This document shows, one piece after another, positions 602 to 63,236 of a DNA stretch of 64,000 bases. Positions within the stretch are counted from its first letter, which is position 1. Every line of letters starts with the position of its first letter. The stretch comes from Pecten maximus. Taxonomy: Eukaryota. The stretch spans positions 1,302,001-1,366,000 of the forward strand of contig NC_047022.1 in assembly GCF_902652985.1 (NCBI RefSeq), read 5' to 3'. A model generated the notes under the pieces. The model worked only from the letters and a program-made list of their open reading frames with translations. It ran no database searches and was not told the DNA's origin. Position numbers and translations under genes: made by a program.

Positions 602-2330
602 TCACATGATCCACCTAAGTGGTATTAAATTTAGCCATTGTGAAAAAGTGTCTAAGATATGCTTAGGGTATACAGGTGTTGGGAAAACCACACTGTAGTA
701 CTGTAGTAGCTTGACTTTTCCACCCCTACACACTGTATATAGCGCATCCTCCCTGTCTACACCGACAGCATATACCTCGTAGATATCTGTGTGTAAGACC
801 CTGAGGAACTCGCCATGCCCACTGAGGAGTAGGACACGGTTGTTATTATAGTCCCCTATGATAATGTTACCTGCATTGTCAACACCACATCCCGGGGCTC
901 AAATGGTTTATCTCCCGACTGTGATGTTGGTTGATAAGTATCAGGGACTTCACCATCATATACAAACAGTTCCTTGAAATGTGTGTCCATGACAACAAGC
1001 ATGTGTTGATTTCCGTCACAACAAACACTTTCATCGTTCAAGACAATCATTGCAAGGTTGTGGGTTAGCCGACACTCTGACACTCTGTATGGTAAACTAA
1101 CTAATGGCTCGCCAGCCGCTGTAGCCGAGGTTGTAGGTAACAATTCACCTTTCGTGGTGAATTTTGAGATTTGTCCGGCCATCCCCACAATAACATGGTT
1201 ACTGGCTGTAATACAGATACACTCTGGTTTCTCATAGGTACTGAATCTGTGTTCCAGCCGTCCTGACACGAGCTCTGAGATATTGTGTTCCCAGTCGCAG
1301 GCCCACAGCGTGTTGGTTATGGGTGACAGACTGATGTCCCAGATCCTAGTATCGTGTTTGACCTCCTGTATTGTATTCCCTTCCCTGTCAAAGAGAGTTA
1401 GTGAATCACGGTAGTTGTCACATGTCCACAATTGGTCATCCATATTTGGGCATGCAGATGAAATTTGACATCGAGACGTCCACTCCCGAAACTGTTTCGT
1501 CTTTGTCAAAAGGGTGTATATAGGACCAAATTCTTCCTTTCTTTTCTTTGATCGTTGTTGAACAGGCGGCGTCTGAAACTTCTGCGAAGGCTGCTGTGAT
1601 GTAGTAGACAGTCGTTCTCCAGATGACCCAACTAACCGATCATTCCCATGTGGCACTCGACCCTGACTCTGAGCCGAGATGGTGACTTCTCCTAAGGCCT
1701 TTTTCAGGCATTCTCCGGGAGTTCTGTTCGGTGTGAATGTAGCCATACCAAGGGTAGGTTGTAGGGGAATATTGACAGGGTAATGGATATCATATCCAAC
1801 GTTAAAGTGAGAACCACGCTGAAGTGCTTTCTTACATTCCTGTACTTTTTGTTCAAGATCTGTCCTGTACGTTTCCAGGTCCCGTTTGTAGGTTTGTAGT
1901 AACTTGGCATTGTCCTCCTCCATTTGTTTATAGAGAGACAAAGTCTGGGTCGACAGCAGGTCAAGTTCCTCTTTTAATTTGTTATTCTGGGTCTTTACCT
2001 TTTGTGACAACTTGTCAAATATACTAACGTTTTCCTTTAAATGGTCATCGGTTGAGGCAATATATTGGTTTATTTGTACTAGGTCAACATTCTCTGTTTT
2101 GTCTATAAAGTCTTGTATATCTTGTTTCTTCTGAGAAGCCAGTTCATCAAGCAAACACAATGTATGGTGTTTATGTGATATTTCTGAGCATTTAATGCAA
2201 ATAAGTTCCTTGCATTATGTACAGTAAAGTTCTATTTGTTTCCCTTTATGGTAGAAACAAAAGGTTCGATCTGTCATGCGGGCAGGAATTGAAACTTTTT
2301 TGTCTGTCAGAGCCTCGGTTTCATTTCCAT
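602..2330 (-). pseudogene. Terminal exon of a TRIM-like gene (B-box, coiled coil, NHL/beta-propeller), disrupted
   Basis: Acceptor tttcag precedes 2330 (phase 1). Translation DGNETEALTDKKVSIPARMTDRTFCFYHKGKQIELYCT*CKELICIKCSEISHKHHTLCLL is a B-box with an in-frame TAA at 2215-2217. Coiled coil and NHL-like blades follow (ORF 856-2160). A 1-nt frameshift near 881 separates PRDVV from DNAGNIIIGDYNNNRVLLLSGHGEFLR...KLLQYY, with a stop at 602-604. Confidence 0.85.
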
Positions 2331-2519
2331 CTGAAATCAGTTAAAAGATGAAAATATGTCTTATTGGCATTCGATACTGAAAACAATGAGTTTGGTAAAG
2401 AAGTAAACTGGAATTATCAGGAACGTTTTAAACGCTTATAACTTCATTTCGATCTCAATGAAAACTTTCATAGTGTACAGTTAATTATTAAAGTCTTATT
2501 AACAGTACACCATTGTTAG

Positions 2520-3694: not shown

Positions 3695-4790
3695 CTTTTG
3701 TGCCAATGGTATATTTCATTCATTCCAGGTTTGTCATTTACCTGTAAACGACAAAAATAAAAATAAAATAAAAAGAATAAAACGACACACCAGAAAATGG
3801 TTTATCTGATGTCAGTTGGTTCGGTTACCACAAAAAATAGTCAAACGACAGAACGTTATATGTAAAAAAAAATAATATGATTGTTGTATGTGCCGCATGA
3901 AAAGCAACAGGTGCTGCAAACAGAGCAACAGGTGCCTCAACGGCAAATACAAGACTTTGTCTTCAAGCATTCATATATTTGAACATCTGTCTAGCTAATG
4001 TTGAGGTTTGTAATTTATCAACAGGATTGTTGAACAGTGCAAGGTAATGGCAGTTCATTGTCTGAAAAGGATCTTTGCTAAAATTACAGATTCTTTTTGA
4101 TTGCTATATTACTGATAGCTTTCTATGATGACTTCCTCCTGTGAATAGCTCATTGATAAACTCATTATTACGAGGATCTTTTGAAGCTGAAGACAAGATA
4201 TCATCTTTCACGATCTGGTTTCTCACGATAATGTCTAGAAATGAGTCCTGGTCTATATATATATATGGATTCCTTGTATGAACTCTACTTCTGGTGAAAC
4301 AGTTGTCTTGATAACATCACACAGAGGCTGACATCTTTTATAAAGCCATATGATTCACTGTGGTGGAAGTGAATTATATCTGTGCAGTGTTGATGGAGCA
4401 TCTTGACTAAAAACGTTTTCCCACAGTCGGCCCGGAAATGTTTGTCGTAAATGAATGCTTGAAGACAAAGTCTTGTATATTCCATCGAGACACCTGTTGC
4501 TCTTTATGCGGCACCTGCGGAAACACTAGCGACTTATTTTGGTACTTGTTCTCATGGTGTGGACTGTTTGATTTAATACATACATTTCATCTGTGTTTTA
4601 TTTTGATCGATGCTTATCCTTCCATCTGTGCCGCAAAAAGTGATTTACCAAGAGCATTTTTTGTGGTAACTGAACCAACTGATAAACCATTTTCTTTTGT
4701 GTCGTTTTATTTTTTCAATTTATTTTTTATCTGTCTTGTTTACGGGTAAATGATAAATCTGGAATGAATGAAACATTGGCACAAAAAAAA
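3695..4790. repeat. Fold-back structure with long imperfect inverted arms
   Basis: 3695-3840 is the reverse complement of ~4655-4790, and 3900-3975 of ~4450-4520. Confidence 0.7.
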
Positions 4791-5544
4791 TTGGCCTATA
4801 ATAGTTGTGATGTAAATGAATCAGCTGTACAATTTTAGGGGAACGTTACAGCTAAACGTAAAGTGAGGTAGGCTCACTTCCTACCTTACAGGGGAATTCG
4901 ATCCTTTGATCTGACCCTCTTGGATGCTCTTGAGGAGAGCGTATTATATAGGGATATATGAACGTTTGTCTGTCTTGTTGTTTTCGGCTGATTGAATTAC
5001 CGTTGATCATGATAAGAAGGGACCTTTCTAAACATTACCTGACGCTATTCATAAGTATTTAAATACAATAAGTTTTTGCCCACTTGATAATTCCTTTTAA
5101 ACTGTTGTACAGAGGATATAGATACCTATAATCACTGTCAAACTGCCTTGTCACCAAACTCTGAACGCCACCATAAACTGTCTGCCAGCATATCTGACCC
5201 GCCACCATAAACTGCTTCCGCCATATCTGGACCTGCCACCATATCTGGACCTGACCTGTCATGACCGTGATCATGACCCCTTGACCTATGACCCTTGACC
5301 TAACTCAATAAACTGTCACCATACATACACCCTTGCTGCTGATAACGAAATCGTAATAATAACTCAAAAAAGCTAAAACATAAATCCATCCATGTGATTT
5401 CATTGTGCCGGATAAAATATTGATAATATTCATATAACTCATATTTGTCTCTAAATACATTTGTGGTAATGCATAGACAAAAATGCAGATCATATGATGA
5501 AGAGATGAACTTTTGTTCACCATTTGAAATAAAATAATATTTAC

Positions 5545-5844
5545 CGGATTGTAGAGACAGGACCGTCATGTTACTCAAACCAGTTCCGTTACAGTTGGTA
5601 GCTGTACACAGGTACTGTCCGTGATCGCCGATGGTTGTTTTACGGATAATTAATGTTGGAGAAAGAATTGAGCCTCCAAAGTACTGTTTGTTGTCAAATT
5701 CTATTGGAATGTCTTCATCGTCTTCTTTTTTAAACCACTGAATTGATGTAACTTCTGGTGAGCTGATGACGTAGGTTTGGATGATTGCCGTTTTCCCGAC
5801 GGGAACAGTGAACTGGCTATGACTGATGTTTACATATGGAGAAC
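5545..5844 (-). CDS. Exon encoding Ig domain 2 (I-set-like); largely missed by the ORF track
   Basis: GSPYVNISHSQFTVPVGKTAIIQTYV...IQWFK...YFGGSILSPTLIIRKTTIGDHGQYLCTATN. 300 nt, phase 1-1. Confidence 0.85.
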
Positions 5845-8800
5845 CTAATAAAGGACATATCCATTAAATATACATTTAAAGTAAGGTGAAACATATCATC
5901 ATACACTGCCATTCACACAATTTTGATTTGTTGAAACATTGTAAGTGTATCAGAAACTTTAAATGTTCAATTTCTAGGGGGCATATTATCATAATAATCA
6001 ACAAATACATTACACTCTAAGAACTATCTCTTCAAAAAAAAATGTTTTTCTGTGAAAATACATGTAGATGTCAATTTATCAAAAATTCTAAAAATAACAT
6101 TATATAGGTAAAATGTTGCATTTTAAGGATGTGCAGACCATCAATAACCGGATCAACTATTTGAAGAATAAAAAGGCAAAACCAAAGGAAGTTAACAGAC
6201 AAAAATATAATACATGTACATACTATTTGAATGACATCTTTTGAATTTCAAAACATTTTCATTGTGTATACAGATAGAAAATTACGGATGGTACTGTTTA
6301 TATAAACACGATGTAAATGTAACCTGGACCAGTTCATGAATCTGATGATAATAATATGGCTACTGGTATTAAACAACAATTTTCCCTCATTAAAACTGTG
6401 TCTTCGCAATAGATAATAAGAATACGTGTACCATGCACTGTATTGAAGGAATGATATTTGAAACAAAAAATGTACATGCACAGCTGTAAAATTGCAATTA
6501 ACCGATGGGAAACTTACTAGCTTTAACTGCATGCTGTGTTGTTATCTGTAAATTATCTTGTTCTAACACTGTGTGTGATTCGTCCATTAATTGTATTGGA
6601 TTCGATTGTAAGGATACACATGTCATGTTTGGTAATGAGAAACACATTTGAAACGTTAAAAGTGCTGTAAACGGTGATTTACCAGTAGGAAAATATGCCA
6701 GAAAATGTATTGGATACTTAGTGTTCACAAGCTGTACAGGTGTACTTACCATCCTCTGGTGTAGTTTCTGGTGTTATCTCGAAACTGTCCTTGACTATTT
6801 GTAACACTGTCTGTGATTCGTCAGTTAGCTGTATGGTGCCACCTTCCAATAGATAATGTTTAAACTCTTCAGCGAGATGTAGAGAAGATGGCTCTGATGC
6901 ACTCCTAGCAGCAGTGATATCTAAACATACTTGGATGCATTCTGAAAAAAAATGTTGCCACGTAAACAAATAGGTGATGAAAACACCAAAATATGAAATC
7001 AACTTATGCTGGGTTCTTTTCTTTTCGTGTTTAATTCCGTTCATATGCATGTTCTAATTAAGCGTACATTAATACATACTTTTTTTCAATTTAGCTTTCC
7101 GCAAATGTCGTGACTGACGTGTTACTCTTGTAAATGTGTCAGAAATATCCTTTTGTGACGCTTGTCTTGTAATGTCAATGTCATTGTTCACATTGAAAAA
7201 CATCCGGCTACCTTGGTCGGTTTGGCAAACAGTGGCTTCAAACAAACAATTTAATACATTACCAAATATATAAAATTTCAAATAAAGCAATACAACTTGC
7301 TTTCAATGAAAGAATTCAAATGTTGAGCATATAACGACCAGATTAACAGATTGACTATCCCAGAATGTAGGTACTATATTTTTGTCTGTGTGTATACATT
7401 TTATTATATCTGAAATGATCACTGTTAACACATAGCGTACCTCTTTTACCGCCAGCAGGCTGTGAATGATCTTCTGTTTCACTGAAATGAAAAATACATT
7501 GTACTCATCAAATATATATTAAACTTGATGTCCCATAACGGAAATTGCAAACAAAGATGGAAGGAAGAACTGAATATTTACTCCTGTTTTAAAACATTTA
7601 AAAAAAAAAAAATAGTTTAAGCTATAATTCTTTTCTGAAATAAAAACAAAATTTGATTTCTTCATTCAAACATGAATCATAAATAAACTCGAATTTAATA
7701 TATGATTTATACTCGTCAATTCGAATTTATCCCCGTCAATTCTTACATCAATAAATTCTAATTTAAAATAGCATCCCCCGTCAATTCTTACATCAATAAA
7801 CTCGAATTTAATACATCATTCACTCCCCCCCCCCCCCCCGACCCCCCACCACCACCCCTGTCAATCTCTACATAACATGCATACATTGTTTGATTTAGAT
7901 CTTTCAGCAAGAAGGAAACTAAACAAACAAAATTAGCCGAATAAAATGTAAAACCAGAAAAAGACAAAGTAGAAAAATGAGTTAAATTATACCTGGTTTA
8001 GGTTGTTTCAAAATTGCTTGCAATACATAAGTTCAGACTAGGTGAAATGCAATGAACATTATCATGACATGAAATTTCGTCATTTATTCATTTATTTTTA
8101 AATCAAATCAGTCGCCATAATTATAAAATTGCTGTTTGTCAACTGCATGGGCCTCTTACTGCGTTAAGGACGTACACCGGATGAGCTTCAAAGAGACAGG
8201 AATACGATTTGTTATAAATTACCCCTAGCTGTGAATGATACTAATACATATTGTCATATAGTGACTGTAATGTCAAGATATAGAGCAATGTCACTGGGGA
8301 CATTTCTTTCAATTAATTAAGTAAAATGTCAGCAAAATTTGAACAAAATCAACAAAATCTAAATTTCAGCCAATCAGAATCACTTAGTGCTAATCAACGA
8401 AATAATGCTCGTATTGTCAAAATGAACCTAAAATCAAATATCAAAACTTTCAGTCAATTAGAAACGACTTCAAACTAGTTGCCATTTTACTTAACCAGCT
8501 ACAAGAAATCAAATAAATGTTGTAAAATCTTATCCACAGATCAAATCTGAATGTATTCTGACCAATCTGTATCTGTACATATCATGGCAATTATTTCATC
8601 AGCACGAAAACGGCTAGGTGCCCTGGACTTGAGGCTTTTAGGTTACGTCGACTCACATCCTGCATTTGTGTCTTTTTCGTCATTCGCCTCATACTACTCA
8701 TAACAAGAAAACGCAGGCGCTCCTAAATTTGAGGTATATGATATATCAAGTGAAAAGGGGGAGGGAGGGGTACAATGTGCACACCTGTAATTATATTTAC

Positions 8801-10900
8801 TCATTATGGCGTGTACATTCTGTCTGTCTGTCTATGGTTGGGAAGTAAATAAGGACTGTGTGAGAATATATTAGAGCGGCATTATTGCCATATCACAAAT
8901 AAATACATCTACAAAAATGTACATGTACCAGCAGAGCAGAAATTCTGATGAGAATTTCAAAAAAATGAGGGAGCGTAGAGTACCTTTTGGAGCGTTTCCT
9001 TCCCCGAGACAATTCATTGGAATCTGATCCACTAGCGGGGGCCTGTTCACTGTTTTCGTTTTCTTTATTTGATTCTGAAATAATAATTGTCCAATACCAT
9101 TATATATATATTGATCCAAATTTAGAATTCAAATATATCTTCGGTGGTTAAAATTTTATCAGATGTTTTAATTTGATGTTGATTAAAACAATCGCATCAA
9201 ATGGATCGCAATCCGGCTTACAAATGGCAAAAATAGTTTTCTATATATCCGCAATTAATATCTAAAAAGGCTGAAATTATATAAAGACGTTTTTCTCTAT
9301 CACTTTGTTACATTTTTTGCCATGGTTTTTGTTCATGTTATCGTAACCATAACTTTATAAAGTTAAGGAAATGAGTAGTGTTGTAATGTAGTGTTATGAT
9401 AATACAACGCTAATCAAAAATACCTGTTTCTGTATGAATACTCTGCTGGGTCCCTTCAAATTCTGGTTCCGACGGTTGGCTGTAAGTACAATTAAAATAT
9501 AAAGAACGATATCAAATATGTCGTCTTTTATTGTATGATATTACGTGTTTCGCTACAAAATGTATACTATCTAATTCTTGATACTGTATACTCCATTCTT
9601 TAATTACGATGTTTTTAGATCATCTTTATTTATTTGACAATATAACTGAAAAAAAAATGTTACCTGTCAATGGGATCATCGCTTTGCCTCGTCATGTTGA
9701 CCGGAACAACAAAAAGAAATAAATGGAATAATTATTAATAAAATTTATCTGTGTAATATCAGAAATTAACAATTTAACAAACACTGAATGAGAAAGAATT
9801 CATGTTTTCAGGTAGACACGAATGGAAAGAGAAAATAGTCTAAAGATAATTCTCAGTTTGTGATGATAATATATTAACAATGCATTTGTCGCAAAATCGG
9901 CATATACATGTACATAATCTATTAAGACCGAATTCAGTACTTACAATAACTTGTCCATAAATAAAAGATTATACGTATAATGTGCGCGTGTGTGTATTTG
10001 ATACTTACGCACTTTCAGATAGACGATGTCACCATCCACTTCTTTTCGACGGGTTTTTGCCGTGCATTGGTATTTGCCTTCATCCATTGGTTGGTTCGGG
10101 TCTCTTATCACAAGTGTAGGCGTTTTCTCACTATAATAGTACTTCCGATTGTCTATAGGGACTTTTTTCCATGATTGCGTACATTTGTCCTTTCTCCATT
10201 CGATGTATTCTGGTACAGGATGTACTGTACAGTCTAAGAAAGAAGCTTCGGATCCTTCCTTCGTAGTATATACGGGCCTATCCATGGAAATAACTATTTC
10301 TTCTGCAGCAAAAGAGTCATGCATATTGTTGATACAACTTTATCATTTGTTTACTAACTATTGAAACATTTTTGAAATTTTCAAACCTTCTAGAATATTT
10401 TCTATGTTTTAGCTATTGGTCATGCAGGACTAACTGAATTGTATCACCACTAAATGCCAAATTAATGCAATAAAGAAAAGAACATGGTAAGATCAACACA
10501 TTATTTATAAATACACCAATTAAGTGATATACACACACAACCATGTAAACCTCATCAAACCAAATAACGTAAAATGCTACCTACCTTTATCTTCCTTTAG
10601 TTTGAGTATTGTGTTCCGTTCTTTTGTATATCTGTTGACGATTAAACACAGTGACGGTTTTATTCGCTTCAGTTTTGGTATTAATTTTTCATAATTTCCA
10701 TAAGAAATAAATATTTTGTCCATCAGGCAAATAAACAGCTGTTGTACTGTTTCTATTTTTTCCTTATCAGCCGGAGTAAGTGGATCGTCCTCGAGAAGAT
10801 GTTTGAGTTCATCCAGCTCCGGACCTGTCATATTGTCACTCAACTCCAAAACCATGTTGTTATGAATACTAATAACCTCGGTAGGCATGTTTGTAGCCAT
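5545..10900 (-). CDS. DED-like + Ig + linker + Ig multi-exon cassette, copy 1 (exon 3 acceptor deleted)
   Basis: Phase-consistent GT-AG exons: 10900-10585 (ATG, DED-like), 10302-10009 (Ig), remnant ~9697-9664, 9479-9424, 9074-8984, 7481-7441, 7235-7080, 6941-6750, 6664-6518, 5844-5545 (Ig). The last exon ends in phase 1, matching the TRIM-like exon at 2330. Confidence 0.75.
10009..10302 (-). CDS. Exon encoding Ig domain 1 (I-set-like)
   Basis: C...IEWRK...PTLVI...DEGKYQC motif. 294 nt, phase 1-1. Confidence 0.85.
10585..10900 (-). CDS. Exon encoding a death effector domain (DED)-like fold
   Basis: LELSDNMTGPELDELKHLL...LFICLMDKIFISYGNYEKLIPKLKRIKPSL matches the DED helix pattern. Acceptor at 10920/10919, an in-frame stop precedes the ATG, donor G|gtaggt. 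Confidence 0.75.
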
Positions 10901-11272
10901 GCTGGAGGTGGCTTATACTCTGAAAACAAACAAAATATTTCGTCTTTTATTGTTCTTACCTGGTATATTGTATATTACCTTATCTATAAAACATTCGCCA
11001 TTCTGTCTACAGAAAATAGTTGGCTTAATACCGCTATTTGTGTACCTACATTTGTAAGTTATTTTATATAGCTGCGAGTACAAAGTCATAGGGCAATATA
11101 ATGAATTTCGAAAATCACAAATTTAAATCAAAAGAAACACCTTGACACTGTGCTGATCTTGACATATATTTACAATGTTTATCTTAGGTTGAAAACTGTG
11201 CATTAATATCAGTTCAGGAAGTTTGAAAAAAAAAAATATATCGAATGAACTATATTGATCAAAGTGCCAGAT

Positions 11273-11465
11273 CCGTTATATTTTTGTATTATCCACACCG
11301 TTATATTTTTGTATTATCCACACCGTTATATTTTTGTATTATCCACACCGTTATATTTTTGTATTATCCACACCGTTATATTTTTGTATTATCCACACCG
11401 TTATATTTTTGTATTATCCACACCGTTATATTTTTGTATTATCCACACCGTTATATTTTTGTATT
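11273..11465. repeat. 25-bp minisatellite, ~7.7 perfect copies
   Basis: Unit CCGTTATATTTTTGTATTATCCACA. Only ~1.7 copies at the paired locus (~45455-45500). Confidence 0.95.
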
Positions 11466-12290
11466 GCTATCGGAATATCCATAGAGTTAAATCCCGACAA
11501 CATCAAAGGAGATGAAGACAGAACCAATCACAAATATTCCACATCATTTAAGTATAAAAAAATCTGTGTTCCCAGTCAGTTTAGAAATATGAATAAAAAA
11601 ACGCGTATTCGACGGATGAAGGCCATTATTATTATCCCATGAAGTGGCTTTCCAAAGCCGCAATGAAAACGCATCTCGACTAGAGTATATATAAGTTAGG
11701 TCATCTTGTCAACTAACTCATTGAAAAACTTAGTTCAGATCAAGTAGGTAATTTATTTTTCTATATTCTATTTATCTTAAACAGATATTCAATCACCTAA
11801 AAACATGACTCAAACAATGAAATAACAAACAAATACTTCGTGGAATAAGAACGTGTGTTTCTGTGACGATGCGGCGCATGATTAACTAGCATTAGTCTGT
11901 CCATCATATCGGCTAACATATCAATAACTCGAGTCACTGTCAATAACAGAAAGTTATGCTGATTATATGTAAATCAGCACGTGCCATATCTGGATTGTTC
12001 TGAAGGACGGTTTACGTGGCAAGAATAATATTGAGTTTACTAATTATACAGCATTAAACCATTTTGAAAGTTTGAAAAAATATCTTGGACACTATAGGCG
12101 ATTCATGGAATATGTCCAGAAGCCAATGCAATATTGTTATGACCTCATGAAGGTTGAAAAAAGTATTTATGATGAGAACGCAGTATCTGTTGTAGGACTC
12201 TACTTCAGTAAATCTTATAAGTTTACATTGTCATATCCATCTGTCACGATTAGTAATTACAATTTGATGCAGTTGTATTGTAAATTTTGC

Positions 12291-12535
12291 AAACAAGCAT
12301 TCTGAGAGTATTGTTAAAGCAATATATGACCCCTACTGCCCCCGCTTAAAATATAAGTGACCCCTGACCTTGACCCAAAAAATCTTGAAACATTGAAGTT
12401 ACATCATACCTTCAATCACCAACATATCTCGAAGCATGACTGAAAGAAGTGTGGAAACCTGAGTTGACGGACGAACGGACGGACGGACTGGGAGGAAACT
12501 TATACTCCTTTCGGTTTTACCGGTAGGGGACTAAT
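12291..12535 (+). mobile_element. Short Helentron/HINE-like non-autonomous element (paired copy ~44390-44640)
   Basis: AAACAAG start, TGACC motifs, (GGAC)n microsatellite and a terminal hairpin-like end GGGGACTAA. Confidence 0.5.
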
Positions 12536-13399
12536 AAACACTCAGATTAAATCAAACTATCTGAAACACGTTTGATATCAGGTTGAATTTAACGAACGTT
12601 TTGATTCTGAGGTCTAAAAAGGCTCCGAATAATAATAACATTGTGGCGGATCTTTCATAAGTAGTAAACAAAGTTTTTTTTTCTACAATCATGTAAATAG
12701 GAACTTGCCTTCAATGCATGTTGATATTTCTTGACATTCTACCGACATAGACCGCGTGTGAACGCTAGCTACCGCGAGTGCTTTCAGGGAAGTGTCTTTA
12801 GCCGTGTCATCTGAACACACAGTTTAGCCAAGTCTCCTTTTCATTTGTATACAAAAATTAAAAATGATTAAATATGGGAATGGGGCTAACCAGAATTGCC
12901 AGGATAAAACATATTATATAAAGGAAATGTGTATCCTGGAGACTGGTTTACTGCATCAATCAGTTTTAACGGGGATTTTAATAATGATTATCTAATTCCT
13001 AAGTTCTCAACAATGGATATAGTGAAAGGTTTGAAGTTGTGTGCAAGTGTGATATTGTTATTTGCATGCATATCACGTTTGTGTTCATACTCAGATCGAT
13101 CCATAGTCTATAACCCAAAACGGAACTTACCAAATTTATATAGTGATCGACACTACAGAGTAAATGTAAATATCTTACCTTATAGGAGGTGTTTTATATC
13201 TACTACCAAAGCCTGCTGGAAAATGCTGTCATCTCTTCAAGAATACAATTCACTTCACATGTTGATTCATCATGAAATCTCCAGTCATCATTTACACGGT
13301 GTGGAATCCTTTAGAAAATTCAACTACGTGTTCCTCATGTTGAAAGGCAAAGGCATCGTTTGGTAATGTCATGCATCTGCAATAACGAAGTATGTTATT

Positions 13400-13912
13400 G
13401 TAGCATAACACCAAATTATCGTAGCATGTCTCAAAATTATCATAACATGTCTCCACATTATCATAACATGTCTCCAAATTATCATAACATGTCTCATAAT
13501 TATTCTTACATGTGTCGCAATTATTCTAACATGTCTCTTAATTAGTATAACATGTCTCGAAATTATCAGAACAGGTCTCCGAATTAGTATAAGATGTGTC
13601 CAAATTAACTTAACATGTCTCAAAATTATAATAACATATCTCCAAACTATCATAACAGGTCTCCAAATTAGTATACCATGTCTCCAAATTATCATTTTAT
13701 ATCTCCAACTTATTATAACATGTCTCCACATCATCATAACATGTCTCCACATTATCATAACATGTCTCCAAATTATTATAACATGTCTCCAAATCATTAT
13801 AACATGTCTCCAAATATCATAACATGTCTCCAAATTATCATAACATGTCTCCAAATTATAAATATGTCCCCAAATTATTATAACATGTCGCAAAATTATC
13901 ATAACATGTCTT
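13400..13912. repeat. 21-bp tandem repeat array (paired array ~43015-43525)
   Basis: Unit ACATGTCTCCAAATTATCATA. It explains the spurious repetitive ORFs here. Confidence 0.95.
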
Positions 13913-14959
13913 TATATTATCTGTTAGCCGGGATATAGACGTATATATGGAGAAAAATATTCAACGGCAAAGCCCCAAACCGCTCTTTTTAACTATTTTT
14001 CTCGATGGAAGGGGATTCAAAAATATTAAATTTGTTTGCTAAACTATTTAAAAGCTAAACTTATACCCGTGCATGTGGGGTTGATGAACTGCACACGAAG
14101 CTTCATCCTCAAATTATAGCTAGGCCTATAGGCCTACTATTGGTGATTAATTTTCATGTAAATTTGGAATTACCGCGGTATCAAATTCTAATGATTATAA
14201 TTTAGTATTTCAAATGAAAACCACAAAATATGTAGAACATAATATTTGAGTAGTTTTCCCGTTAATAACCATCGATTTTTACACAAAAATATCCTTCAAA
14301 TGTCGACGTTCAATGACGAAATGTTGTGAGAGATGTAGGCTAATGTTCTATTTAGAAAAGTTTAACCGTTTGACCTCTGACCCAAGATGGCGGCCACCAC
14401 TTTCACTTCTAATTTTTAATACTGTTAACAGTTACATATAACTTGCATCATTTTAAAGGGGATAAATCAACCCTTTTACTGCTGGTGTCCGAACAAAAAT
14501 CCATTCAGTAATAACGGAGATATGTTCTAATATATACAAAATATTATGAAAAATCTCTTCACGCCTGAGTGCATTCCGGGTTTTGTCCTCACCCCGGCGT
14601 TATATGCAAAACGTCTATAAAATGCCCGTACGCATGTATGCCAGTATACTTGTACACATGAACAGATGACGTCGTTCGAATGTGTATGTGTGAAAACTTT
14701 CGGTTTCAAAAGCTCACAATGTGTTAGTTTGTGTGACTGTTTTTATACTTACCAGGAAGTCCGCGTTCATCCGAGTCGACTGTGGCCTACTCATACTCCC
14801 TTTATACACATGGAAGGTTTATATCTCAAGCCTTATAAGCCAACATTGAAATGGTGTCAAAGCAAAATATATGTCACTAGAACAAAATATTGCACTATAG
14901 ATTTATGTTTAAAATCTTCACATATCTGCAACAGCTAAGCCAAGCCAATATAACAGAAA

Positions 14960-17041
14960 AACAAGAGGCCTAATGGGCCTGTATCGCTCACCTGGCTCTA
15001 CAGCAACTTTGAAGTTGATTGAGGTCATTTCTACAGATACTATGCTGATTATCATAGTAAGCTAGGTTTATTCATATCAATAAATTTTCTAGTCCTTCAT
15101 TCCAGCATTTTATTGGCCTAATATCTGGTCTAGGAGGCTCTTGGCTATCGCAAAATTATTGTTTACAGATTTAAGCTGGGACCTTAAATGTAGGTCAAGG
15201 GTCATTAATTTGAACAAACTTTGTAGCCCTTCACCCAAGCATGCTACAGGCCCAATATCAAGTCCCTGGGCCTTTTGGTTATTAAGAAGAAGTCATTTGA
15301 AGAATATAGCCTATTTGACCAATATGACCTTGAATGAAGGTCAACGTCATTTATTTGAACAAACTTTGTAGCCCTTCACCCAAGCATGCTACAGGTCCAA
15401 TATCAAGTCCCTGGGCCTCTTGGTTATTGAGAAGAAGTCGTTTGAAGATTATAGCCTATTTGACCCATGTGACCTTTAATGAAGGTCAAGGTCATTTATT
15501 TGAACAAACTTTGTAGCCCTTCACCCAAGCATGCTACAGACCCAATACCAAGTCCCTGGGTCTCTTGGTTATTGAGAAGAAGTTGTTTGAAGAATATAGC
15601 CTATTGGACCCATGTGACCTTGAATGAAGATCAAAGTCATTTATTTGAATAAAGTTTGTAGCCCTTTACGCTAGCATGCTACAGGCCCAATATCAAGTCC
15701 CTTGGCCTCTTGGTTATTGAGAAGAAGTTGTTTGAAGAGTATAGCCTATTTGACCCATGTGACCTTGAATGAAGGTTAACGTCATTTATTTGAACAAAAC
15801 TTTGTAGCCCTTCACCCCAGCATGCTACAGGTCCAATATCAAGTCCCTGGGCCTCTTGGTTATTGAGAAGTCGTTTGAAGATTATAGCCTATTTGACCCA
15901 TGTGACCTTTAATGAAGGTCAAGGTCATTTATTTGAACAAACTTTGTAGCCCTTCACCCAAGCATGCTACAGGACCAATATCAAGTACCTGGGCCTCTTG
16001 GTTATTGTGAAGAAGTCGTTTGAAGATTATAGCCTATTTGACCAATGTGACCTTGAATGAAGGTCGACGTCATTTATTTGAACAAACTTTGTAGCCCTTC
16101 ACCCCAGCATGCTACAGGCCCAATATCAAGTCCCTGGGCCTCTTGGTTATTGAGAAGAAGTCGTTTGAAGATTATAGCCTATTTGACCAATGTGACCTTG
16201 AATGAAGGTCAAGGTCATTTATTTGAACAAACTTTGTAGCCCCTCACCCCAGCATGCTACAGGCCCAATATCAAGTCCATGGGCCTCTTGGTTATTGAGA
16301 AGAAGTTGTTTGAAGATTATAGCCTATTCGACCCATGTGACCTTTAATGAAGGTCAAGGTTATTTATTTGAACAAACTTTGTAGCCCCTCACCCCAGCAT
16401 GCTACAGGTCCAATATCAAGTCCCTGGGCCTCTTGGTTATTGAGAAGAAGTCGTTTGAAGATTATAGCCTATTTGACACATGTGACCTTGAATGAAGGTC
16501 AAAATTACTTTTATTTGAACAAACTTTGTAGCCCTTCACCCAAGCATGCTACAGGCATAATATGAAGTTCCTAGGCCTCTTGGTTATTGAGAAGAAGTCG
16601 TTTGAAGATTATAACCTATTTGACCAGTGTGACCTTGAATGAAGGTCAAGGTCATTTATTTGAACAAACTTGGTACTCCTTCACCCCAGCATGCTACAGG
16701 CCCAATATCAAGTCCCTGGGCCTCTTGGTTATTGAGAAGAAGTCGTTTGAAGATTATAGCCTATTTGACCCATGTGACCTTGAATGAAGGTCAAGGTCAA
16801 TTATTTGAACAAACTTGGAAGCCCTTCACCCCAGTATGCTACAGGCCCAATATGAAGTTCCTGGGCCTCTTGGTTATTGAGAAGAAGTTGTTTAAATGAA
16901 AAAGTTGACGCCGGACGGCCGGACGGCCGGACGGACGGCCGGACAGACGGCCGGACAGACGGCCGGACGGCCGGACAGACGGACGGACGACGGACGCCGC
17001 ACCATGGCATAAGCTCACTTGCCCTTCGGGCAGGTGAGCTA
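14960..17041 (+). mobile_element. Helentron-associated (HINE/Pearl-like) element carrying ~12 copies of a 145-bp satellite; left arm only
   Basis: Starts AACAAGAGGCC...GCTCACCTG. 145-bp units span ~15190-16895, followed by a (GGAC)n/(GGCC) microsatellite and a terminal hairpin AGCTCACTTGCCC-TTC-GGGCAGGTGAGCT. The empty site is a T-run at ~41971-41977. Confidence 0.85.
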
Positions 17042-48800: not shown

Positions 48801-49656
48801 ATTGCGAAGACACAGTTTTAATGAGGGAAAATTGTTGTTTAATACCAGAAGCCATATTATTATCATCAGATTCATGAACTGGTCCAGGTTACATTTACAT
48901 CGTGTTTATATAAACAGTAATTTTCTATCTGTATACACAATGAAAATGTTATGAAATTCAAAAGATGTCATTCAAATAGTATGTACATGTATTATATTTT
49001 TGTCTGCTAACTTCCTTTGGTTTTGCCTTTTAAGTCTTCAAATAGTTGATCCGGTTATTGATGGTCTGCACATCCTTAAAATGCAACATTTTACCTATAT
49101 AATGTTATTTTTAGAATTTTTGTTAAATTGACATCTACATGTATTTTCACAGAAAAACATATTTTTTGAAGAGATAGTTCTTAGAGTGTAATGTATTTGT
49201 TGATTATTATGATAATCTGCCTCCAAGAAATTGAACATTTAAAGTTTCTGATACACTTACAATGTTTCAACAAATCAAAATCGTGTGAATGGCAGTGTAT
49301 GATGATATGTTTCACCTTACTTTAAATATATATTTAATGGATATGTCCTTTATTAGGTTCTCCATATGTAAACATCAGTCATAGCCAGTTCACTGTTCCC
49401 GTCGGGAAAACGGCAATCATCCAAACGTACGTCATCAGCTCATCAGAAGTTACATCAATTCAGTGGTTTAAAAAAGAAGACGATGAAGACATTCCAATAG
49501 CATTTGACAACAAACAGTACTTTGGAGGCTCAATTCTTTCTCCAACATTAATTATCCGTAAAACAACCATCAGCGATCACGGACAGTACCTGTGTACAGC
49601 TACCAACTGTAACGGAACAGGTTTGAGTAACATGACGGTCCTGTCTCTACAATCAG
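45820..49656 (+). CDS. DED-like + Ig + linker + Ig multi-exon cassette, copy 2 (open, ~506 codons, no stop)
   Basis: Exons 45820-46135, 46444-46737, 47120-47192, 47719-47759, 47965-48120, 48259-48450, 48536-48682 and 49357-49656. All are GT-AG bounded, phase-consistent and stop-free. The chain ends in phase 1. Confidence 0.78.
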
Positions 49657-49761
49657 GTAAATATTATCTTATTTCAAATGGTGAACAAAAATTCATCTCT
49701 TCATCATATGATCTGCCTTTTTATCTAAGGATTACCACAAATGTATTTAGAGACAAATATG

Positions 49762-51181
49762 CCCAGTGGGCACACAACGTCTGGAGAACGTTGCAGTTAC
49801 GTCAGGATGCAACGTTGCATTTAGGTTATAGTAAGGTTGCAAATGAAAATTTGGGGAACGTTTTCAAACAACGTTCCCACAACGTTACTGTGTTACGATG
49901 TGGCAACGTTTTATTTACGTTGTATAGACGTTGTCACAACGTCGTATTATTTTATTTTCTACTATTGCTGCCTATGTACAACAAAAACTCAAGTTGTTTT
50001 ATACAGTATTTTAATGTCTTTATTTCCATGTGTCCATGTGCTTGCACTCCTCCCATCACTCCTATCTGATGTCTCCGATTACCTCGGTGCATCCAGTTAT
50101 CTCCATTAAATCTGTAAATAGAAAAACAACCAAAACAATAATTATTGATATACCGTAAACTTTTTGGCAATATATCATAACGTATGTGTTCGGTTAACAA
50201 ATATGCGTGAAACTAAACTTATGCCCGGTGATACCAAAAACGTACATCCGTTGTACGTACGTACGTGAAGATAAATTATAACATGCCCGCGATCTATTTG
50301 TAAATAAACACAAGTCAAAATCAAACTCCGTATAATAGAAAATACGAATCATATAGAACTTACCTTGAATTACTTATCTGTATTCGGGAAGAAAGCTGAT
50401 TCCATACGTTATTTTGAAAGCAAATACATAATCCAGTACAGCAAGTCAACAGTCCGATTGAAATGTGTGTGTGTTGGGCCCACGTGTGTTTGCAGAACAA
50501 AGAACCGGAAGTTAAAATTACCGCGCAAATATTAATACCCTTTTTTCTTCTCTCTGTCTATTTCTTTTCCCGAAAAAAAATCGCAACAGTTTCAACCAAA
50601 ACATGATATTTTCATGCAGTTTAAACTGAAATTAAGTCGTTTAAAAAAATGTTTTTGAAACGAATGTGAATGTTTGTATTGCCCCCTGGCGGATATATAT
50701 TGCAACATAAAGGGAGGTAACACCGATTTGTTATCGTAACCTCGGAAGTTCGAGTTTGATCACATTTATTGGTATAAAAGGAGGTCTAACAGCAAAATAG
50801 GACCAGGAAAGGATCAATGATCGATATATGTTATTAGGGCACATTATAAGCGACGTAGGTTGCTTTTAAAATAATCTAAACAGATTCATTATTGACAAAT
50901 AAAATTTCGAGCCAATTAGATAATTAAATTTATCATGAAATTTTATGTTTTCGTTCGGTATGTCTTTGGCATTTGTGTAAACTTGCAACCCGTTTAAAAT
51001 TAACAACACATATACAAAGTTTGCATTAAAACCTTGTGACAACGTTGTTACAACGTCACAAGCTAACGTTGTACTAACGTTTGACATGAAACGTTCTCAC
51101 AACGTTGTAGGAAAGTCCCGGACGTTGTGACCTGAATAGGACGTTTTCCGGACGTTCTCCGAACGTTTTGTGTCCACTGGG
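49762..51181. mobile_element. Non-autonomous CACTA/EnSpm (CMC)-type DNA transposon, 1420 bp; right arm only
   Basis: TIR CCCAGTGGGCACACAACGT / ACGTTTTGTGTCCACTGGG, 2-bp TSD TG, many subterminal AACGTT repeats. The empty site is at ~5440. Confidence 0.85.
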
Positions 51182-52390
51182 TGAGTTATGTGAATACCAT
51201 CAATATTTTATGCAGCATAATGAAATCACATGGATGGTGTTATGTTTTAAATTATTTGAGTTATAATTACGGTTTCGTTATCAGCGACAAGGGTTATGTA
51301 TGGTGGCAGTTTATTGAGTTAGGTCAAGGGTCATAGGTCAAGGGGTCATGATCACGGTCATGACAGGTCAGGTCAAGATATGGCGGAAGCAGTTTGTGGT
51401 GGCGGGTCAGATATGCTGGCAGACAGTTTATGGTGGTGTTCAGAGTTTGGTGACAAGGCAGTTTGACAGTGATTATAGGTATTTATATCCCCCGTACAAC
51501 AGTTTAAAAGGAATTATCAAGTGGGCAAAAACTTATTGTATTTAAACACTTATGAATAGCGTCACGTAATGTTTAGAAAGGTCCCTTCTTATCATGATCA
51601 ACGGTAATCCAATCAGCCGAAAACAACAAGACAGACAAACGTTCATATATCCCTATATAATACGCTCTCCTCAAGAGCATCCAAGAGGATCAGATCAAAG
51701 GATCGAGTTCCCCTGTAAGGTAGGAAAAGGGGCTACCTTCTTTTACGTTTAGCTATAACATTCCCCTAGAATTGTACAGCTGATTCAATTACATCAGAAC
51801 TATTATAGGCCAAATTTTTTTGTGCTAATGTTTCATTCATTCCAGGTTTATCATTTAACTGTAAACAAGAAAGATAAAAAGGAAATTTAAAAAATAAAAC
51901 GACACAAAAGAAAATGGTTTATTAGTTGGTTCAGTTACCACAAAAAATGCTCTTGGTAAATCACTTTTTGCGGCACAGATGGAAGGATAAACATCGATCA
52001 AAATGAAACACAGATGAAATGTATGTATTAAATCATATTCTCGAGCTCATTTACTCCGGCATGAAAAAAGATAAACATTGGAACCATTTTGCCGGTGTGC
52101 TTCCGTTCAAACAGTCCACACCATGAGAACAAGTACCAAAATAAGTCGCTAGTGTTTCCGCATAAAGAGCAACAGGTATCTCAATGGAACATTTACGACA
52201 AACATTTCTGGACCGACTGTGGGAAAAAGTTTTTAGTCAAGATGCTCCTTCAACACTGCACAGAATTTACTTCCACCACAGTGAATCATATGGCTTTATA
52301 AAAGATGGCAGCCTCTGTGTGATATTATCAATACAACTGTTTCACCAGAAGTAGAGTTCATACAAGGAACTCATATATATATATATATAG

Positions 52391-53193: not shown

Positions 53194-53199
53194 ACGCCG

Positions 53200-59351: not shown

Positions 59352-62300
59352 ACGCCGACATCACTGCTATCCGGGAGGGCAACCTGGTCAAAGTTAAAGA
59401 GCTGGCTGAATCTGGTTTTCCATTTGACAAACAAAATGAATTCGGGAAGACACCACTGATGGGCAGCATTGAGTACGGTCATCGAAATATAGCAGAGTAT
59501 CTAACAGATAAGGTATCACGTCAATCCCTGTTGGTGATGAATCGTGAACAGCATTGGAATGCTTTGCATCTAATCGCAAACTATGGGCGTCACTGGCCTG
59601 ACATATGGTCGAACATTGTGCAAAAAGCGCCGGTATGCTTAAATCATGTCGACTCAGAAGGCCGAACACCAGAGCAGCTACTTGAGCAATTGTCTACAAG
59701 CAGTGAGAGGCATGCGAAACTTGCTAAAATGTTGAAAGCAGGTATGTTTCTTATATAACTTTATTCGGTAAAAGCATTGCCGAAATAGTTTATTGGACAA
59801 AGAATCAATGCTTGAGAGTTTTGTGAACATACCAACTTCGCCTTTGGTATGCTTTATGTTTGTTTTAAGGCATGTGTTAAACACAATACATAGTCCACAG
59901 CGATGAACCCTTTGTCTTTCGGGCTTTTTGTATTTTTAATATTCGAAGACATTATTTAATCTAAGCCATAATTCTGTTAGATTATTTGTAAAAACAGTAG
60001 TCCTTTTTATTGATTATTGATTTGTACTGATCAAAATAATATAAAACCCTTCTTCCAAGTTTTGCCTTACGGGTTTTCAATACTTAATTTACAGAGCTTC
60101 CATCCTTCGTCAAGGAATTAGACGAGGAGTCCATATCAAATTATTTAACTGGATTAGACGAGCATGCAGAGGAAACACGAAACATCAAAATTATGCTCAT
60201 TGGACATGAAATGGTCGGGAAAACTTGTCTGGTAAAGCAGCTGTTCGGGGAACATATTGATTTGCAGAGTCATCACTCAACCAATGTTGCGGAACTTCAT
60301 CTCCGAAGACTTTTGTTGGACATGCGGACACTGGAGAGAATATCAGGCACTTCAGCGAAGGACATTGTACTTGAGCGACTTCGTATGGTTATCAGTGAAA
60401 TCAAAGACGGTAACCCGAATGATTGAAACAGAATCAAACATGACCAGAAAAGGTGAACCGATACCTATAATACATATCACAGTATAATATCTGACACAAC
60501 AGACGCATTTTGGTGTGAATTACAATATCCCTTATGACAATAAATGCTTACTTTTGTCTGATTATATAATGAATGATATGGTTTACACATACATATTTAG
60601 GTGCTATGTATTCAGTTCTTATTTATGTATTAATTATATGTCTCGTTACAATTCTGGTATTTATTTTGTTTCAGACGCTACGACAGAACACCTCCTATTG
60701 TCTGGACACTCCGAAGGTAATGTTCAGTATATTAAGCCCTCGTTGCAAACACAGTAACACAAAATTATGACTCGACAACAAGGATTTTATACGGGAAAAA
60801 GTATAAGATTGGTTACACAATATACAATAGTCTAAATCAGCCCGTGCTGACAATGCTATTAGGTCGGGTGGTTCGTAATCTCAGCTACTTAAGAACATAA
60901 AGTGATTAAACCAGTAGTTCAGAGAGATAAATAATGATTCTTTAACTGGAACGGCCATGCATATTATAAATATCTAATCAATCAATATTGATCACTCACA
61001 GGTACTAATGTTGAAGAATTTTCCATATTGACCGGGGGTACAGGAATTGAAAAAACAGGTAAGATTCTTATTTTCATAGTAGAATATTTATTACAAAATA
61101 AATCAATGTTAATTGGTATTTTTAAAAGATTAAGATGATTCCCCAATGCAATACATTATCTTTGTATCATATGATATTGTACAGTAGGGTACATACATTA
61201 TTTATACTATGTACCATATGATATTGTACAGTAGGATACATACATTTTCATACTATGTACCATTTGAAATGATACAGTAGGGTACATACATTATTTATAC
61301 TATGTACCATATGAAATGGTACAGTAGGGTACATACATTATATATACTATGTACCATATGATATTGTACAGTAGGATACATACATTTTCATACTATGTAC
61401 CATATGATACTGTACAGTAGGGTACATACATTATATATACTATGTACCATATGATATTGTACAGTAGGATACATACATTTTCATACTATGTACCATATGA
61501 TACTGTACAGTAGGGTACATACATTATATATACTATGTACCATATGATATTGTACAGTAGGGTTCATACATTATTTATACTATGTACAATAAGATATTGT
61601 ACAGTAGGGTACATACATTATATATACTATGTACCATATGATATTGTACAGTAGGGTACATACATTATTTATACTATGTACCATATGATATTGTACAGTA
61701 GGGTACATACATTATATATACTATGTACAATAAGATATTGTACAGTAGGGTACATACATTTTCATACTATATACCATATGAAATGGTACAATAGGGTACA
61801 TACATTATTTATACTATGTACCATATGAAATGGTACAGTAGGATACATACAATTTCATACTATGTACCATATGATACTGTACAGTAGGGTACATACATTA
61901 TTTAAACTATGTACCATATGATACTGTACAGTAGGGAAAAAGTATAAGATTGGTTACACAACATACAATAGTCTAAATCAGCCCGTGCTGACAATGCTAT
62001 TAGGTCGGGTGGTTCGTAATCTCAGCTACTTAAGAACATAAAGTGATTAAACCAGTAGTTCAGAGAGATAAATAATGATTCTTTAACTGAAACGGCCATG
62101 CATATTATAAATATCTAATCAATCAATATTGATCACTCACAGGTACTAATGTTGAAGAATTTTCCATATTGACCGGGGGTACAGGAATTGAAAAAACAGG
62201 TAAGATTCTTATTTTCATAGTAGAATATTTATTACAAAATAAATCAATGTTAATTGGTATTTTTAAAAGATTAAGATGATTCCCCAATGCAATACATTAT

Positions 62301-63236
62301 CTTTGTATCATATGATATTGTACAGTAGGGTACATACATTATTTATACTATGTACCATATGATATTGTACAGTAGGGTACATATATTTTCATACTATGTA
62401 CCATTTGAAATGGTACAGTAGGGTACATACATTATTTATACTATGTACCATATGAAATGGTACAGTAGGGTACATACATTATTTATACTATGTACCATAT
62501 GATACTGTACAGTAGGGTACATACATTATATATACTATGTACCATATGATATTGTACAGTAGGATACATACATTATATATACTATGTACCATAGAATATT
62601 GTACAGTAGGGTACATACATTATTTATACTATGTACCATATGAAATGGTACAGTAGGGTACATACATTATTTATACTATGTACCATATGATATTGTACAG
62701 TAGGGTACATACATTATTTATACTATGTACCATAGGATATTGTACAGTAGGGTACATACATTATATATACTTTGTACCATATGATATTGTACAGCTGAGA
62801 ATACGCATTTTACTTCAGTTTGATTTATGTCATTTCAAGGAGTTTAACTTACTTGTCCGTTCCTATAGATTTTTTTTTCACTTAAATAGACAGGTAAACG
62901 TTGTTTTGACGTAGTTTGCTTGCGCTTTCGTTATCATATTCAAACCCACACGATGTTTACGTTTAGACACCGATTTCGTTTATAACCGGGGAGATGACGT
63001 ACAGAGATCTGATACTGCAAATCTCACCAAACAACAAAGAGAGTTTGTCGATCTGGTGCTGCGCAAGGATCCAAATTCTCTGTACGAGTCAAAGGCATTC
63101 GTCACAATGTATGACTTTGGAGGAGAAGAAGTCTTCTACAATACCCATCACTCTCTCATGACAAGTGATAGTATCTACCTGCTGGTGTTCGACGCTGCCA
63201 TGTGTCTCAACGAAAAGAAAGAACAAGGAGGTCTAG
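59352..63236 (+). CDS. Partial ankyrin-repeat + Roc GTPase (Roco family) gene; continues beyond the gap/window
   Basis: Phase 1-1 exons: 59352-59741 (ankyrin: GKTPLMGSIEYGHRNIAEYL, WNALHL, GRTP), 60095-60409 (P-loop IMLIGHEMVGKT), 60675-60716, 61002-61058, 62143-62199 and 62967-63236 (MYDFGGEEVFYNTHHSLM...IYLLVFD). All are open. Confidence 0.85.
60793..62795. repeat. Tandem duplication (offset 1141) including a 57-nt exon and a 45-47-bp minisatellite
   Basis: Sequence from 60793 recurs from 61934, near-identical. Arrays at ~61150-61933 and ~62290-62795 have the unit GTACCATATGATATTGTACAGTAGGGTACATACATTATTTATACTAT. Confidence 0.92.

What the first reader, a model, noticed from the sequence alone, without database searches (positions are those of the whole stretch)
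602..63236. One DED-Ig-Ig module positioned in front of two different C-termini (TRIM-NHL on minus, ankyrin-Roc on plus) by an inverted duplication
Seen: both arms carry the same DED-Ig-linker-Ig exon chain ending in a phase-1 donor (5545 minus, 49656 plus), and the duplication ends inside the following intron. The next recognisable coding exon is a phase-1 B-box/CC/NHL exon (2330) on the left and a phase-1 ankyrin exon (59352) leading into a Roc GTPase on the right. Both joins would be in frame (G+AT, G+AC). I could not identify a separate start exon for the Roco gene. Established: DEDs recruit FADD/caspase-8-type partners, and TRIM-NHL and Roco families are expanded in some invertebrates. 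Inference: this is exon shuffling caught in progress, generating modular cytosolic death-fold receptors such as DED-Ig-Ig-ANK-Roc(-COR), an architecture I do not recognise.
Basis: partly seen in the sequence, partly recalled or inferred. Interest (0 to 1): 0.85.

Follow-up and report, generated by a model that had tools for sequence, protein, structure and literature searches.

The report
Duplicated scallop DED-Ig gene, no Roco fusion
An inverted duplication in the king scallop genome copied the front half of a death-effector/immunoglobulin gene, but RNA contigs show the copy is not spliced onto the neighbouring Roc GTPase gene, so the proposed new receptor is not supported.

Summary
The window is Pecten maximus C8:1302001-1366000. 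The inverted duplication is real: arms 4254-21551 and 37121-52385, about 94% identical, with a 15.5 kb unique spacer.

The left join, 5545 to 2330, is used by RefSeq model LOC117332525. That protein stops at an in-frame TAA (2215-2217) inside the B-box. The left copy also lacks the acceptor of exon 3 and has a frameshift in the NHL part, so it is a decaying parental DED-Ig-Ig-B-box-CC-NHL gene.

The right copy (XP_033747779.1, 463 aa) ends in a 17-base coding exon at 51111. That exon lies inside a 1.42 kb transposon found only in the right arm.

The ankyrin exon (59352-59738) is real and is spliced to Roc. In RNA contigs of three runs it is preceded by other sequence, not by Ig2. That sequence is absent from the window and from the whole assembly. 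No DED+Ig+Roc protein turned up in public proteomes.

The family-level idea does hold. In scallops this DED-Ig-Ig cassette sits in front of B-box-NHL, nSTAND3-ankyrin or beta-roll tails. Earlier notes of this scan (s1-792226, s1-792376) cover parts of the same DNA.

The parts
4254..21551 (-). Left arm of the inverted duplication. It carries the parental copy, read on the minus strand.
   Evidence: Self-BLAST and the repeat finder. Left-only inserts lie at 7813-9475 and in the tandem array 15177-16893.
37121..52385 (+). Right arm of the inverted duplication. It carries the derived, truncated copy.
   Evidence: The outer end lies at a (TA)n tract.
10585..10900 (-). Left exon 1: start codon plus DED.
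   Evidence: Pfam DED 40.9 bits. 7 of 316 bases differ from the right copy.
10009..10302 (-). Left exon 2: Ig1.
   Evidence: Pfam Ig_3/I-set. 22 of 294 bases differ, in 16 replacement and 3 silent codons.
9664..9695 (-). Remnant of left exon 3. The acceptor and first 34 bases are deleted, and the RefSeq model LOC117332525 starts here.
   Evidence: Alignment of the left and right copies. Exact mapping of P0041.
8984..9479 (-). Two left-only linker exons (9424-9479 and 8984-9074). They are ancestral, being shared with paralogue P0002.
   Evidence: and the P0002 sequence.
6750..7481 (-). Left linker exons 7441-7481, 7080-7235 and 6750-6941. The last two encode a conserved alpha/beta linker domain.
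   Evidence: AlphaFold model of P0001, residues 250-352.
5545..5844 (-). Left Ig2 exon with a phase-1 donor at 5545.
602..2330 (-). Left terminal B-box/coiled-coil/NHL exon. It is broken by TAA at 2215-2217 and by one missing base near 886.
   Evidence: It is 54-56% identical to the intact C17 paralogue exon, which has Pfam B-box and NHL hits.
45820..46135 (+). Right exon 1: start codon plus DED.
   Evidence: Exact mapping of XP_033747779.1 (P0001).
46444..46737 (+). Right exon 2: Ig1.
47120..48450 (+). Right linker exons 47120-47192, 47719-47759, 47965-48120 and 48259-48450.
49357..49656 (+). Right Ig2 exon with a phase-1 donor at 49656.
49762..51181 (+). 1420-base element with terminal inverted repeats, inserted only in the right arm.
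   Evidence: At least 40 full-length copies at 90-98% identity across the genome. Inverted ends and a clean insertion site.
51111..51130 (+). Terminal mini-exon of the right copy in RefSeq, encoding (G)KSRTL plus TGA. It lies inside the transposon.
59352..59738 (+). Ankyrin exon of the neighbouring ANK-Roc-COR-Death-Death gene.
   Evidence: Pfam Ank_2. RNA contigs start at 59349/59352 and join 59738 to 60092.
60092..60450 (+). First Roc exon (P-loop). The reference has one extra base at 60417 compared with RNA.
60673..63346 (+). Further Roco exons: 60673-60719, an exon starting at 61005 or 62146, and the Roc continuation within 62915-63346. The gene runs on beyond the window.
   Evidence: COR-A and two Death domains lie in L032.

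Best explanation
The locus is one node of a fast-evolving, scallop-specific gene family. Its constant N-terminal cassette is DED, a V-like Ig, a disordered stretch, a roughly 100-residue alpha/beta linker domain and an I-set Ig. Phase-1 exons join this cassette to interchangeable C-terminal modules.

An inverted segmental duplication, with arms of about 15-17 kb that now differ by about 6%, copied the 5' part of a DED-Ig-Ig-B-box-coiled-coil-NHL gene. It did not copy the terminal exon.

The left copy keeps the ancestral layout but is decaying in the reference. It has lost the acceptor of exon 3, has a nonsense codon in the B-box, and has a frameshift in the NHL propeller.

The right copy is an intact 463-residue DED-Ig-linker-Ig reading frame. 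It ends in a short exon supplied by a DNA transposon that inserted after the duplication. Its likeliest role is a tail-less adaptor or decoy that could still engage DED partners. That role is inference.

The ANK-Roc-COR-Death-Death gene downstream is an unrelated neighbour from a different scallop family. Its ankyrin exon is spliced to its own upstream exon or exons, which the reference assembly does not contain.
For: Duplication and exon maps.

Ancestral layout: DED, Ig1, Ig2 and B-box/NHL are colinear at C8:3.596 Mb and C8:3.06 Mb, and C17 has DED followed by B-box/NHL. Full-length Argopecten proteins of 1248 and 990 aa have the same order.

Left lesions. RefSeq ends the left protein at the TAA.

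Right copy: XP_033747779.1 maps exactly and ends at 51111-51130, inside a repeat present in at least 40 copies.

Roco is separate:
- RNA contigs of runs X1, X2 and X3 reach the ankyrin exon from ...GAAGTCGTACAACTAATTGTGT(CAG). This is unlike the Ig2 end ...CTGTCTCTACAATCAG.
- No word of 12 bases or more from that sequence occurs in the window.
- It is absent from the assembly at up to 3 mismatches.
- Positive controls worked.
- There is no RNA contig cover at 56850-59348.
- Roco paralogues on C16 and C7 have no DED nearby.

Fold: the model matches the PEA-15 DED at Z 13.4, and Ig domains at Z about 14.8-14.9.
Against: The junction 49656 to 51111 rests on a RefSeq model only.

Logan contigs drop rare variants, so a minor fusion isoform cannot be excluded.

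The upstream partner of the ankyrin exon was not located anywhere. Its identity as the Roco gene's own exon is inferred from an open frame of 10 codons that resembles an ankyrin helix.

The reference differs from all RNA runs at 60417. Single-base lesions such as the NHL frameshift could therefore be assembly errors or private alleles.
Confidence: 0.7

Rival explanations
1. Transcripts from the right cassette skip the transposon exon and splice 49656 to 59352. This would give a chimeric DED-Ig-Ig-ANK-Roc-COR-Death mRNA, at least as a minor form or one specific to the reference haplotype.
For: Both sites are good phase-1 splice sites on the same strand, 9.7 kb apart. The reference assembly holds no other upstream exon for the ankyrin exon. 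A related cassette is fused to nSTAND3-ankyrin tails elsewhere.
Against: The three runs whose contigs reach the exon start (X1, X2, X3) show a different upstream sequence. RefSeq terminates the cassette at 51111. No DED+Ig+Roc protein appeared in the search of long cassette proteins. On the reference haplotype the Roc exon is frameshifted, reading GNPND then stop, so a fusion there would be truncated.
Confidence: 0.06
2. Assembly artefact. The two arms are the two haplotypes of a single locus that were wrongly joined head to head.
For: Bivalve genomes are highly heterozygous (general knowledge). The arms differ by only about 6%. The reference shows at least one discrepancy with RNA.
Against: There is no N run between the arms, and a 15.5 kb unique spacer separates them. 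The arms differ by several large indels: a 1.42 kb transposon, 1.66 kb of linker region, a 2 kb satellite and a 112-base deletion. Ig1 differs by 7.5%, mostly through replacement changes. Wrongly joined haplotigs usually sit at contig ends with gaps between them (general knowledge).
Confidence: 0.07
3. The left gene is functional in the population. On this view the TAA, the frameshift and perhaps the deletion are private to the sequenced chromosome or are sequencing errors, and an intact DED-Ig-Ig-B-box-CC-NHL protein is made in other individuals.
For: All RNA runs disagree with the reference at 59421, 60397 and 60417, so the reference carries rare or erroneous states nearby. The frameshift sits in a short T run. 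Apart from the deleted 5' part of exon 3, the cassette exons compared in the left copy keep open frames and splice sites.
Against: There are three independent lesions, one of them a 112-base deletion that is not a typical consensus error. The paralogue at C8:3.596 Mb is frameshifted too, so decay is common in this family.
Confidence: 0.15

Closest known systems
TRIM-NHL proteins (TRIM2/3/32/71 type), expanded in bivalves
   Same: The terminal exon encodes a B-box, a long helical stretch and an NHL-type propeller in one piece. More than 100 paralogous single-exon copies occur in this genome. The intact C17 paralogue has Pfam B-box and NHL hits.
   Different: There is no RING. In its place sits a DED, with or without two Ig domains and a linker domain. 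The window's own copy is interrupted by a stop and a frameshift.
Death-fold adaptors with lineage-specific shuffled partners in bivalves (Kaur, Iyer, Burroughs and Aravind 2021, PMC8195603)
   Same: A death-like domain at the N-terminus is combined with STAND NTPases, ankyrins, B-boxes and propellers in lineage-specific expansions. The nSTAND3-ankyrin members found here fit that picture.
   Different: That paper centres on TRADD-N and bacterial death-like domains. The places where my term search hit do not mention a constant DED-Ig-linker-Ig cassette. The cassette was found here only in Pectinidae.
DAPK1-like ROCO proteins (ANK-Roc-COR-Death)
   Same: The downstream gene has ankyrin, Roc, COR-A and Death domains in DAPK1 order. 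It belongs to a kinase-less scallop family that this scan noted elsewhere.
   Different: No kinase was found, and there are two Death domains. It is not joined to the DED-Ig cassette.
Small DED-only regulators such as PEA-15 or FLIP-type decoys
   Same: The right copy keeps a DED whose model superposes on the PEA-15 DED (Z 13.4, rmsd 1.7 over 89 residues). It lacks any effector tail.
   Different: It carries two Ig domains and a linker domain. No partner is known, and a decoy role is only inferred.

Membership tests
TRIM / TRIM-NHL | N-terminal RING finger | tested here: not met
   Pfam found no RING in the left exons, in P0041, or in relatives P0002, P0007 and P0010. A DED occupies the N-terminus.
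TRIM / TRIM-NHL | B-box zinc finger | tested here: inconclusive
   The motif is readable at 2218-2330 and onward, but a TAA sits between its cysteines (ELYCT*CKELIC). Paralogues score 28.9-38.8 bits for zf-B_box.
TRIM / TRIM-NHL | C-terminal NHL beta-propeller | tested here: inconclusive
   The window pieces score only 15.9 bits for NHL. They are 54-63% identical to the C17 exon, which scores 34 bits. The frame is broken near 886.
DED-containing death-fold proteins | Six-helix DED recognised by profile and by fold | tested here: met
   Pfam DED scores 40.9 bits against a cut-off of 35.9. The model matches the PEA-15 DED at Z 13.4.
Immunoglobulin superfamily (I-set / V-like) | Two Ig folds | tested here: met
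   Pfam I-set and Ig_3 score above their cut-offs. Structural matches reach Z 14.8-14.9.
ROCO proteins | Roc GTPase directly followed by COR | tested here: met
   Roc hits fall on two exon pieces (23 bits each, below the cut-off because the domain is split). COR-A occurs in L032. RNA joins the ANK exon to the Roc exon. The gene is 84% identical to the C16 paralogue across the Roc exon.
DAPK1 | N-terminal Ser/Thr kinase domain | tested here: inconclusive
   No kinase was found in the window or in the 10 kb flanks of the paralogues. The true 5' exons of the transcript were not found at all.
Proposed DED-Ig-Ig-ANK-Roc chimera | mRNA junction 49656 to 59352 | tested here: not met
   RNA contigs of three runs carry other sequence in front of 59352.

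The most novel reading that the evidence does not exclude
The sequenced chromosome is a structural variant. The duplication and transposon activity removed the Roco gene's normal 5' exons, which are expressed from other chromosomes but absent from the assembly. On this chromosome alone, the Ig2 donor would then be the nearest usable phase-1 donor in front of the ankyrin exon. That would give a polymorphic DED-Ig-Ig-ANK-Roc fusion transcript, a gene fusion still segregating in the population.
Probability: 0.05. Interest if true: 0.7.

Novelty: new variant of a known kind. Interest (0 to 1): 0.35.

Why it matters
The proposed new receptor architecture, DED-Ig-Ig-ANK-Roc, should not be carried forward.

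What remains is useful for invertebrate immunity. Scallops have a private family in which a cytosolic DED-Ig-linker-Ig cassette is plugged by phase-1 exons onto TRIM-like NHL propellers, STAND NTPase-ankyrin modules or repeat tails. This locus shows how such families turn over: a partial inverted duplication, decay of the parent copy, and rescue of the truncated copy by a transposon-derived last exon.

The locus also flags that the reference chromosome differs from the expressed alleles. It has a frameshift at 60417 and lacks the upstream Roco exon. That matters for anyone using this annotation.

Tried and rejected
- I searched for the Roco upstream partner by pattern in the window and in the whole assembly. 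Only chance-level matches came back.
- I compared the upstream regions of the window and of paralogues by blastn, tblastx, peptide regex and donor-anchored BLOSUM scans. No conserved exon emerged.
- I compared the partner with the mini-ankyrin ROCO locus noted by the scan at C8:29.48 Mb. Nothing useful came of it.
- The search for homologous proteins with the ankyrin exon gave no hit. Length limits kept full Roco models out of reach.
- The look-up of encoding contigs for P0001 reported it as not on record.
- The fold search with the whole model was filled by Ig hits, so the linker domain (P0001 residues 250-352) stays unidentified.
- Two paper searches found no description of a DED-Ig cassette in scallops. 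This does not prove that none exists.
- A spliced-leader origin for the upstream sequence is rejected. It is 208-357 bases long and has no genomic copy.
- No joined spliced model of my own (DED-Ig-Ig-ANK-Roc or DED-Ig-Ig-B-box-NHL) was built or searched. Exons were searched one by one by reference, and whole proteins only as RefSeq entries returned by the tools.
Full report
**Where and what.** The window is C8:1302001-1366000 of a 918 Mb assembly. Proteins encoded here are RefSeq entries of Pecten maximus.

**The duplication.** Self-comparison confirms an inverted duplication. The left arm is 4254-21551 and the right arm is 37121-52385. About 12.9 kb aligns at 88-97% identity, weighted about 94%. 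A 15.5 kb unique spacer separates the arms, and no N run lies between them.

The inner ends of the arms are retrotransposon pol sequence. The spacer holds type-B DNA polymerase fragments, and a gag-like SCAN reading frame lies just outside the right arm.

The RefSeq protein XP_033747779.1 (P0001, 463 aa) maps exactly onto the right arm as eight exons:
- 45820-46135
- 46444-46737
- 47120-47192
- 47719-47759
- 47965-48120
- 48259-48450
- 49357-49656
- 51111-51127, followed by TGA

The left arm has the same exons with conserved splice sites, except for exon 3. The donors at 5545 and 49656 and the acceptors at 2330 and 59352 are as described, all phase 1.

An AlphaFold model of P0001 (mean pLDDT 78) shows five parts:
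- a DED that matches PEA-15 (Z 13.4)
- a V-like Ig
- a disordered stretch, 208-246
- an unidentified alpha/beta domain, 250-352
- an I-set Ig

**The left side.** P0041 (LOC117332525, 327 aa) maps to 9695-9664, 9479-9424, 9074-8984, 7481-7441, 7235-7080, 6941-6750, 5844-5545 and 2330-2218. It ends at TAA 2217-2215, in the middle of the B-box (ELYCT*CKELIC). Intact paralogues read YCKQC or YCEQC at that point, so a CAA became TAA.

Further on, one base is missing near 886. The last NHL blades therefore lie in another frame. The C17 paralogue reads straight through the same point.

The left copy also lacks 112 bases that the right copy has (47041-47152). These include the acceptor and first 34 bases of exon 3. 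This explains why the RefSeq model starts at an internal ATG and omits DED and Ig1.

**Which copy is ancestral.** The own-genome searches show at least 45 DED exons of this type. DED, Ig1, Ig2 and B-box/NHL lie in the same order at C8:3.596 Mb and at C8:3.06 Mb. On C17 a DED is followed directly by an intact 565-codon B-box/NHL exon.

Argopecten irradians has full-length proteins of 1248 and 990 aa with the same order. The left copy also keeps two linker exons that it shares with paralogue P0002 and that the right copy has lost.

So the left layout is the parent, and the right copy is a partial duplicate lacking the terminal exon.

**The right side.** After Ig2, the RefSeq model goes to 51111 (acceptor ...ttgtag) and reads (G)KSRTL then stop. 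That exon lies in a 1420-base insert, 49762-51181, that is absent from the left arm. The insert has inverted ends and at least 40 full-length copies at 90-98% identity on many chromosomes. It is a DNA transposon that arrived after the duplication.

I could not check this junction with reads.

**The Roco gene.** It continues beyond the window with COR-A and two Death domains. Its paralogues are on C16 and C7, with no DED nearby.

I used RNA contigs of four runs from three studies. The results:
- The ankyrin exon is real (59349/59352 to 59738).
- It is spliced to the Roc exon (59738 to 60092, GT..AG) and onward (60450 to 60673).
- There is no cover at 56850-59348.

In runs X1, X2 and X3, which come from two studies, the contigs continue upstream of 59349 for 33, 255 or more, and 208 bases that do not lie on the stretch. 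X2 and X3 end in CGTATGGTGAAGTCGTACAACTAATTGTGT. X1 shares the last 22 of those bases behind an adapter remnant. The Ig2 exon ends ...CTGTCTCTACAATCAG, so Ig2 is not the partner.

No word of 12 or more bases from the partner occurs anywhere in the window. The partner is absent from the whole assembly at up to 3 mismatches. The control searches work: the ankyrin exon start is found once, and the downstream loose end is found exactly, at 61005 and 62146.

In the correct frame the partner reads YGEVVQLIVS|D. This resembles the second helix of an ankyrin repeat, but that is a weak inference.

All RNA runs that cover position 60417 (X1, X2, X3) also lack one base that the reference has there. On the reference the Roc exon therefore runs into a stop (GNPND*), while the RNA stays open.

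**Proteome check.** I searched the cassette of the 1248-aa Argopecten protein against proteins of 686-2184 aa. It found eight proteins, all from scallops. Their tails are B-box(-NHL), nSTAND3 with or without ankyrin, beta-roll, or no Pfam domain at all. None has Roc or COR (Pfam).

A neighbour 32 kb left of the window, LOC117332830, carries the same Ig2-type exon in front of nSTAND3.

Shuffling of death-like domains with STAND, ankyrin, B-box and propeller modules in bivalve expansions has been described (PMC8195603).

**Verdict.** The family-level idea of a shuffled cassette holds. The specific DED-Ig-Ig-ANK-Roc product is not supported.

The in-frame fit carries little weight, because every domain exon at issue in both families is phase 1 at the relevant boundary.

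Open points are where the true 5' end of the Roco transcript lies, and whether the reference chromosome is an unusual or partly erroneous haplotype.

Noticed in passing
window 60417: The reference has one extra base in the first Roc exon compared with the RNA contigs of all three runs that cover it. This puts a stop at 60424-60426. The same runs also share differences from the reference at 59421 and 60397.
   Followed up: partly
window 47965-48450 (right) and 6750-7235 (left); P0001 residues 250-352: A conserved domain of about 100 residues lies between the two Ig domains. It is a mixed alpha/beta domain (alternating strands and two helices in the model) with no Pfam match and many near-invariant residues. 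It occurs twice in the Argopecten 1248-aa protein.
   Followed up: partly
window 46444-46737 vs 10009-10302: The Ig1 exon differs by 7.5% between the copies, with 16 replacement and 3 silent codon changes. DED and Ig2 differ by about 2%. This could reflect positive selection or conversion from another paralogue.
   Followed up: partly
window 60793-61651 and 61934-62794: A direct 0.86 kb duplication (97%) full of roughly 47-base tandem repeats lies inside the Roco gene. It includes two identical copies of the sequence that the RNA joins after 60719 (at 61005 and 62146).
   Followed up: partly
window 15177-16893: A tandem array of a roughly 145-base unit, about 1.7 kb long, is present only in the left arm.
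   Followed up: no
window 22612-25744: Fragmented reading frames with type-B DNA polymerase (organellar/viral type) matches lie in the spacer between the arms.
   Followed up: partly
window 19244-21300 and 37380-39932; 52850-54284: Retrotransposon pol pieces (RNase H, integrase) form the inner ends of both arms. A gag-like SCAN reading frame lies just outside the right arm.
   Followed up: partly
L022 (C8:3594001-3604000): The paralogue with the same DED-Ig-Ig-B-box-NHL layout has its own frameshift near L022:8058. Its RefSeq protein (XP_033747274.1, 711 aa) ends early, so decay is recurrent in this family.
   Followed up: partly
L034 (C8:1262001-1272000): A neighbouring gene, LOC117332830 (1070 aa), joins the same Ig2-type exon to an nSTAND3 NTPase 32 kb left of the window.
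   Followed up: partly
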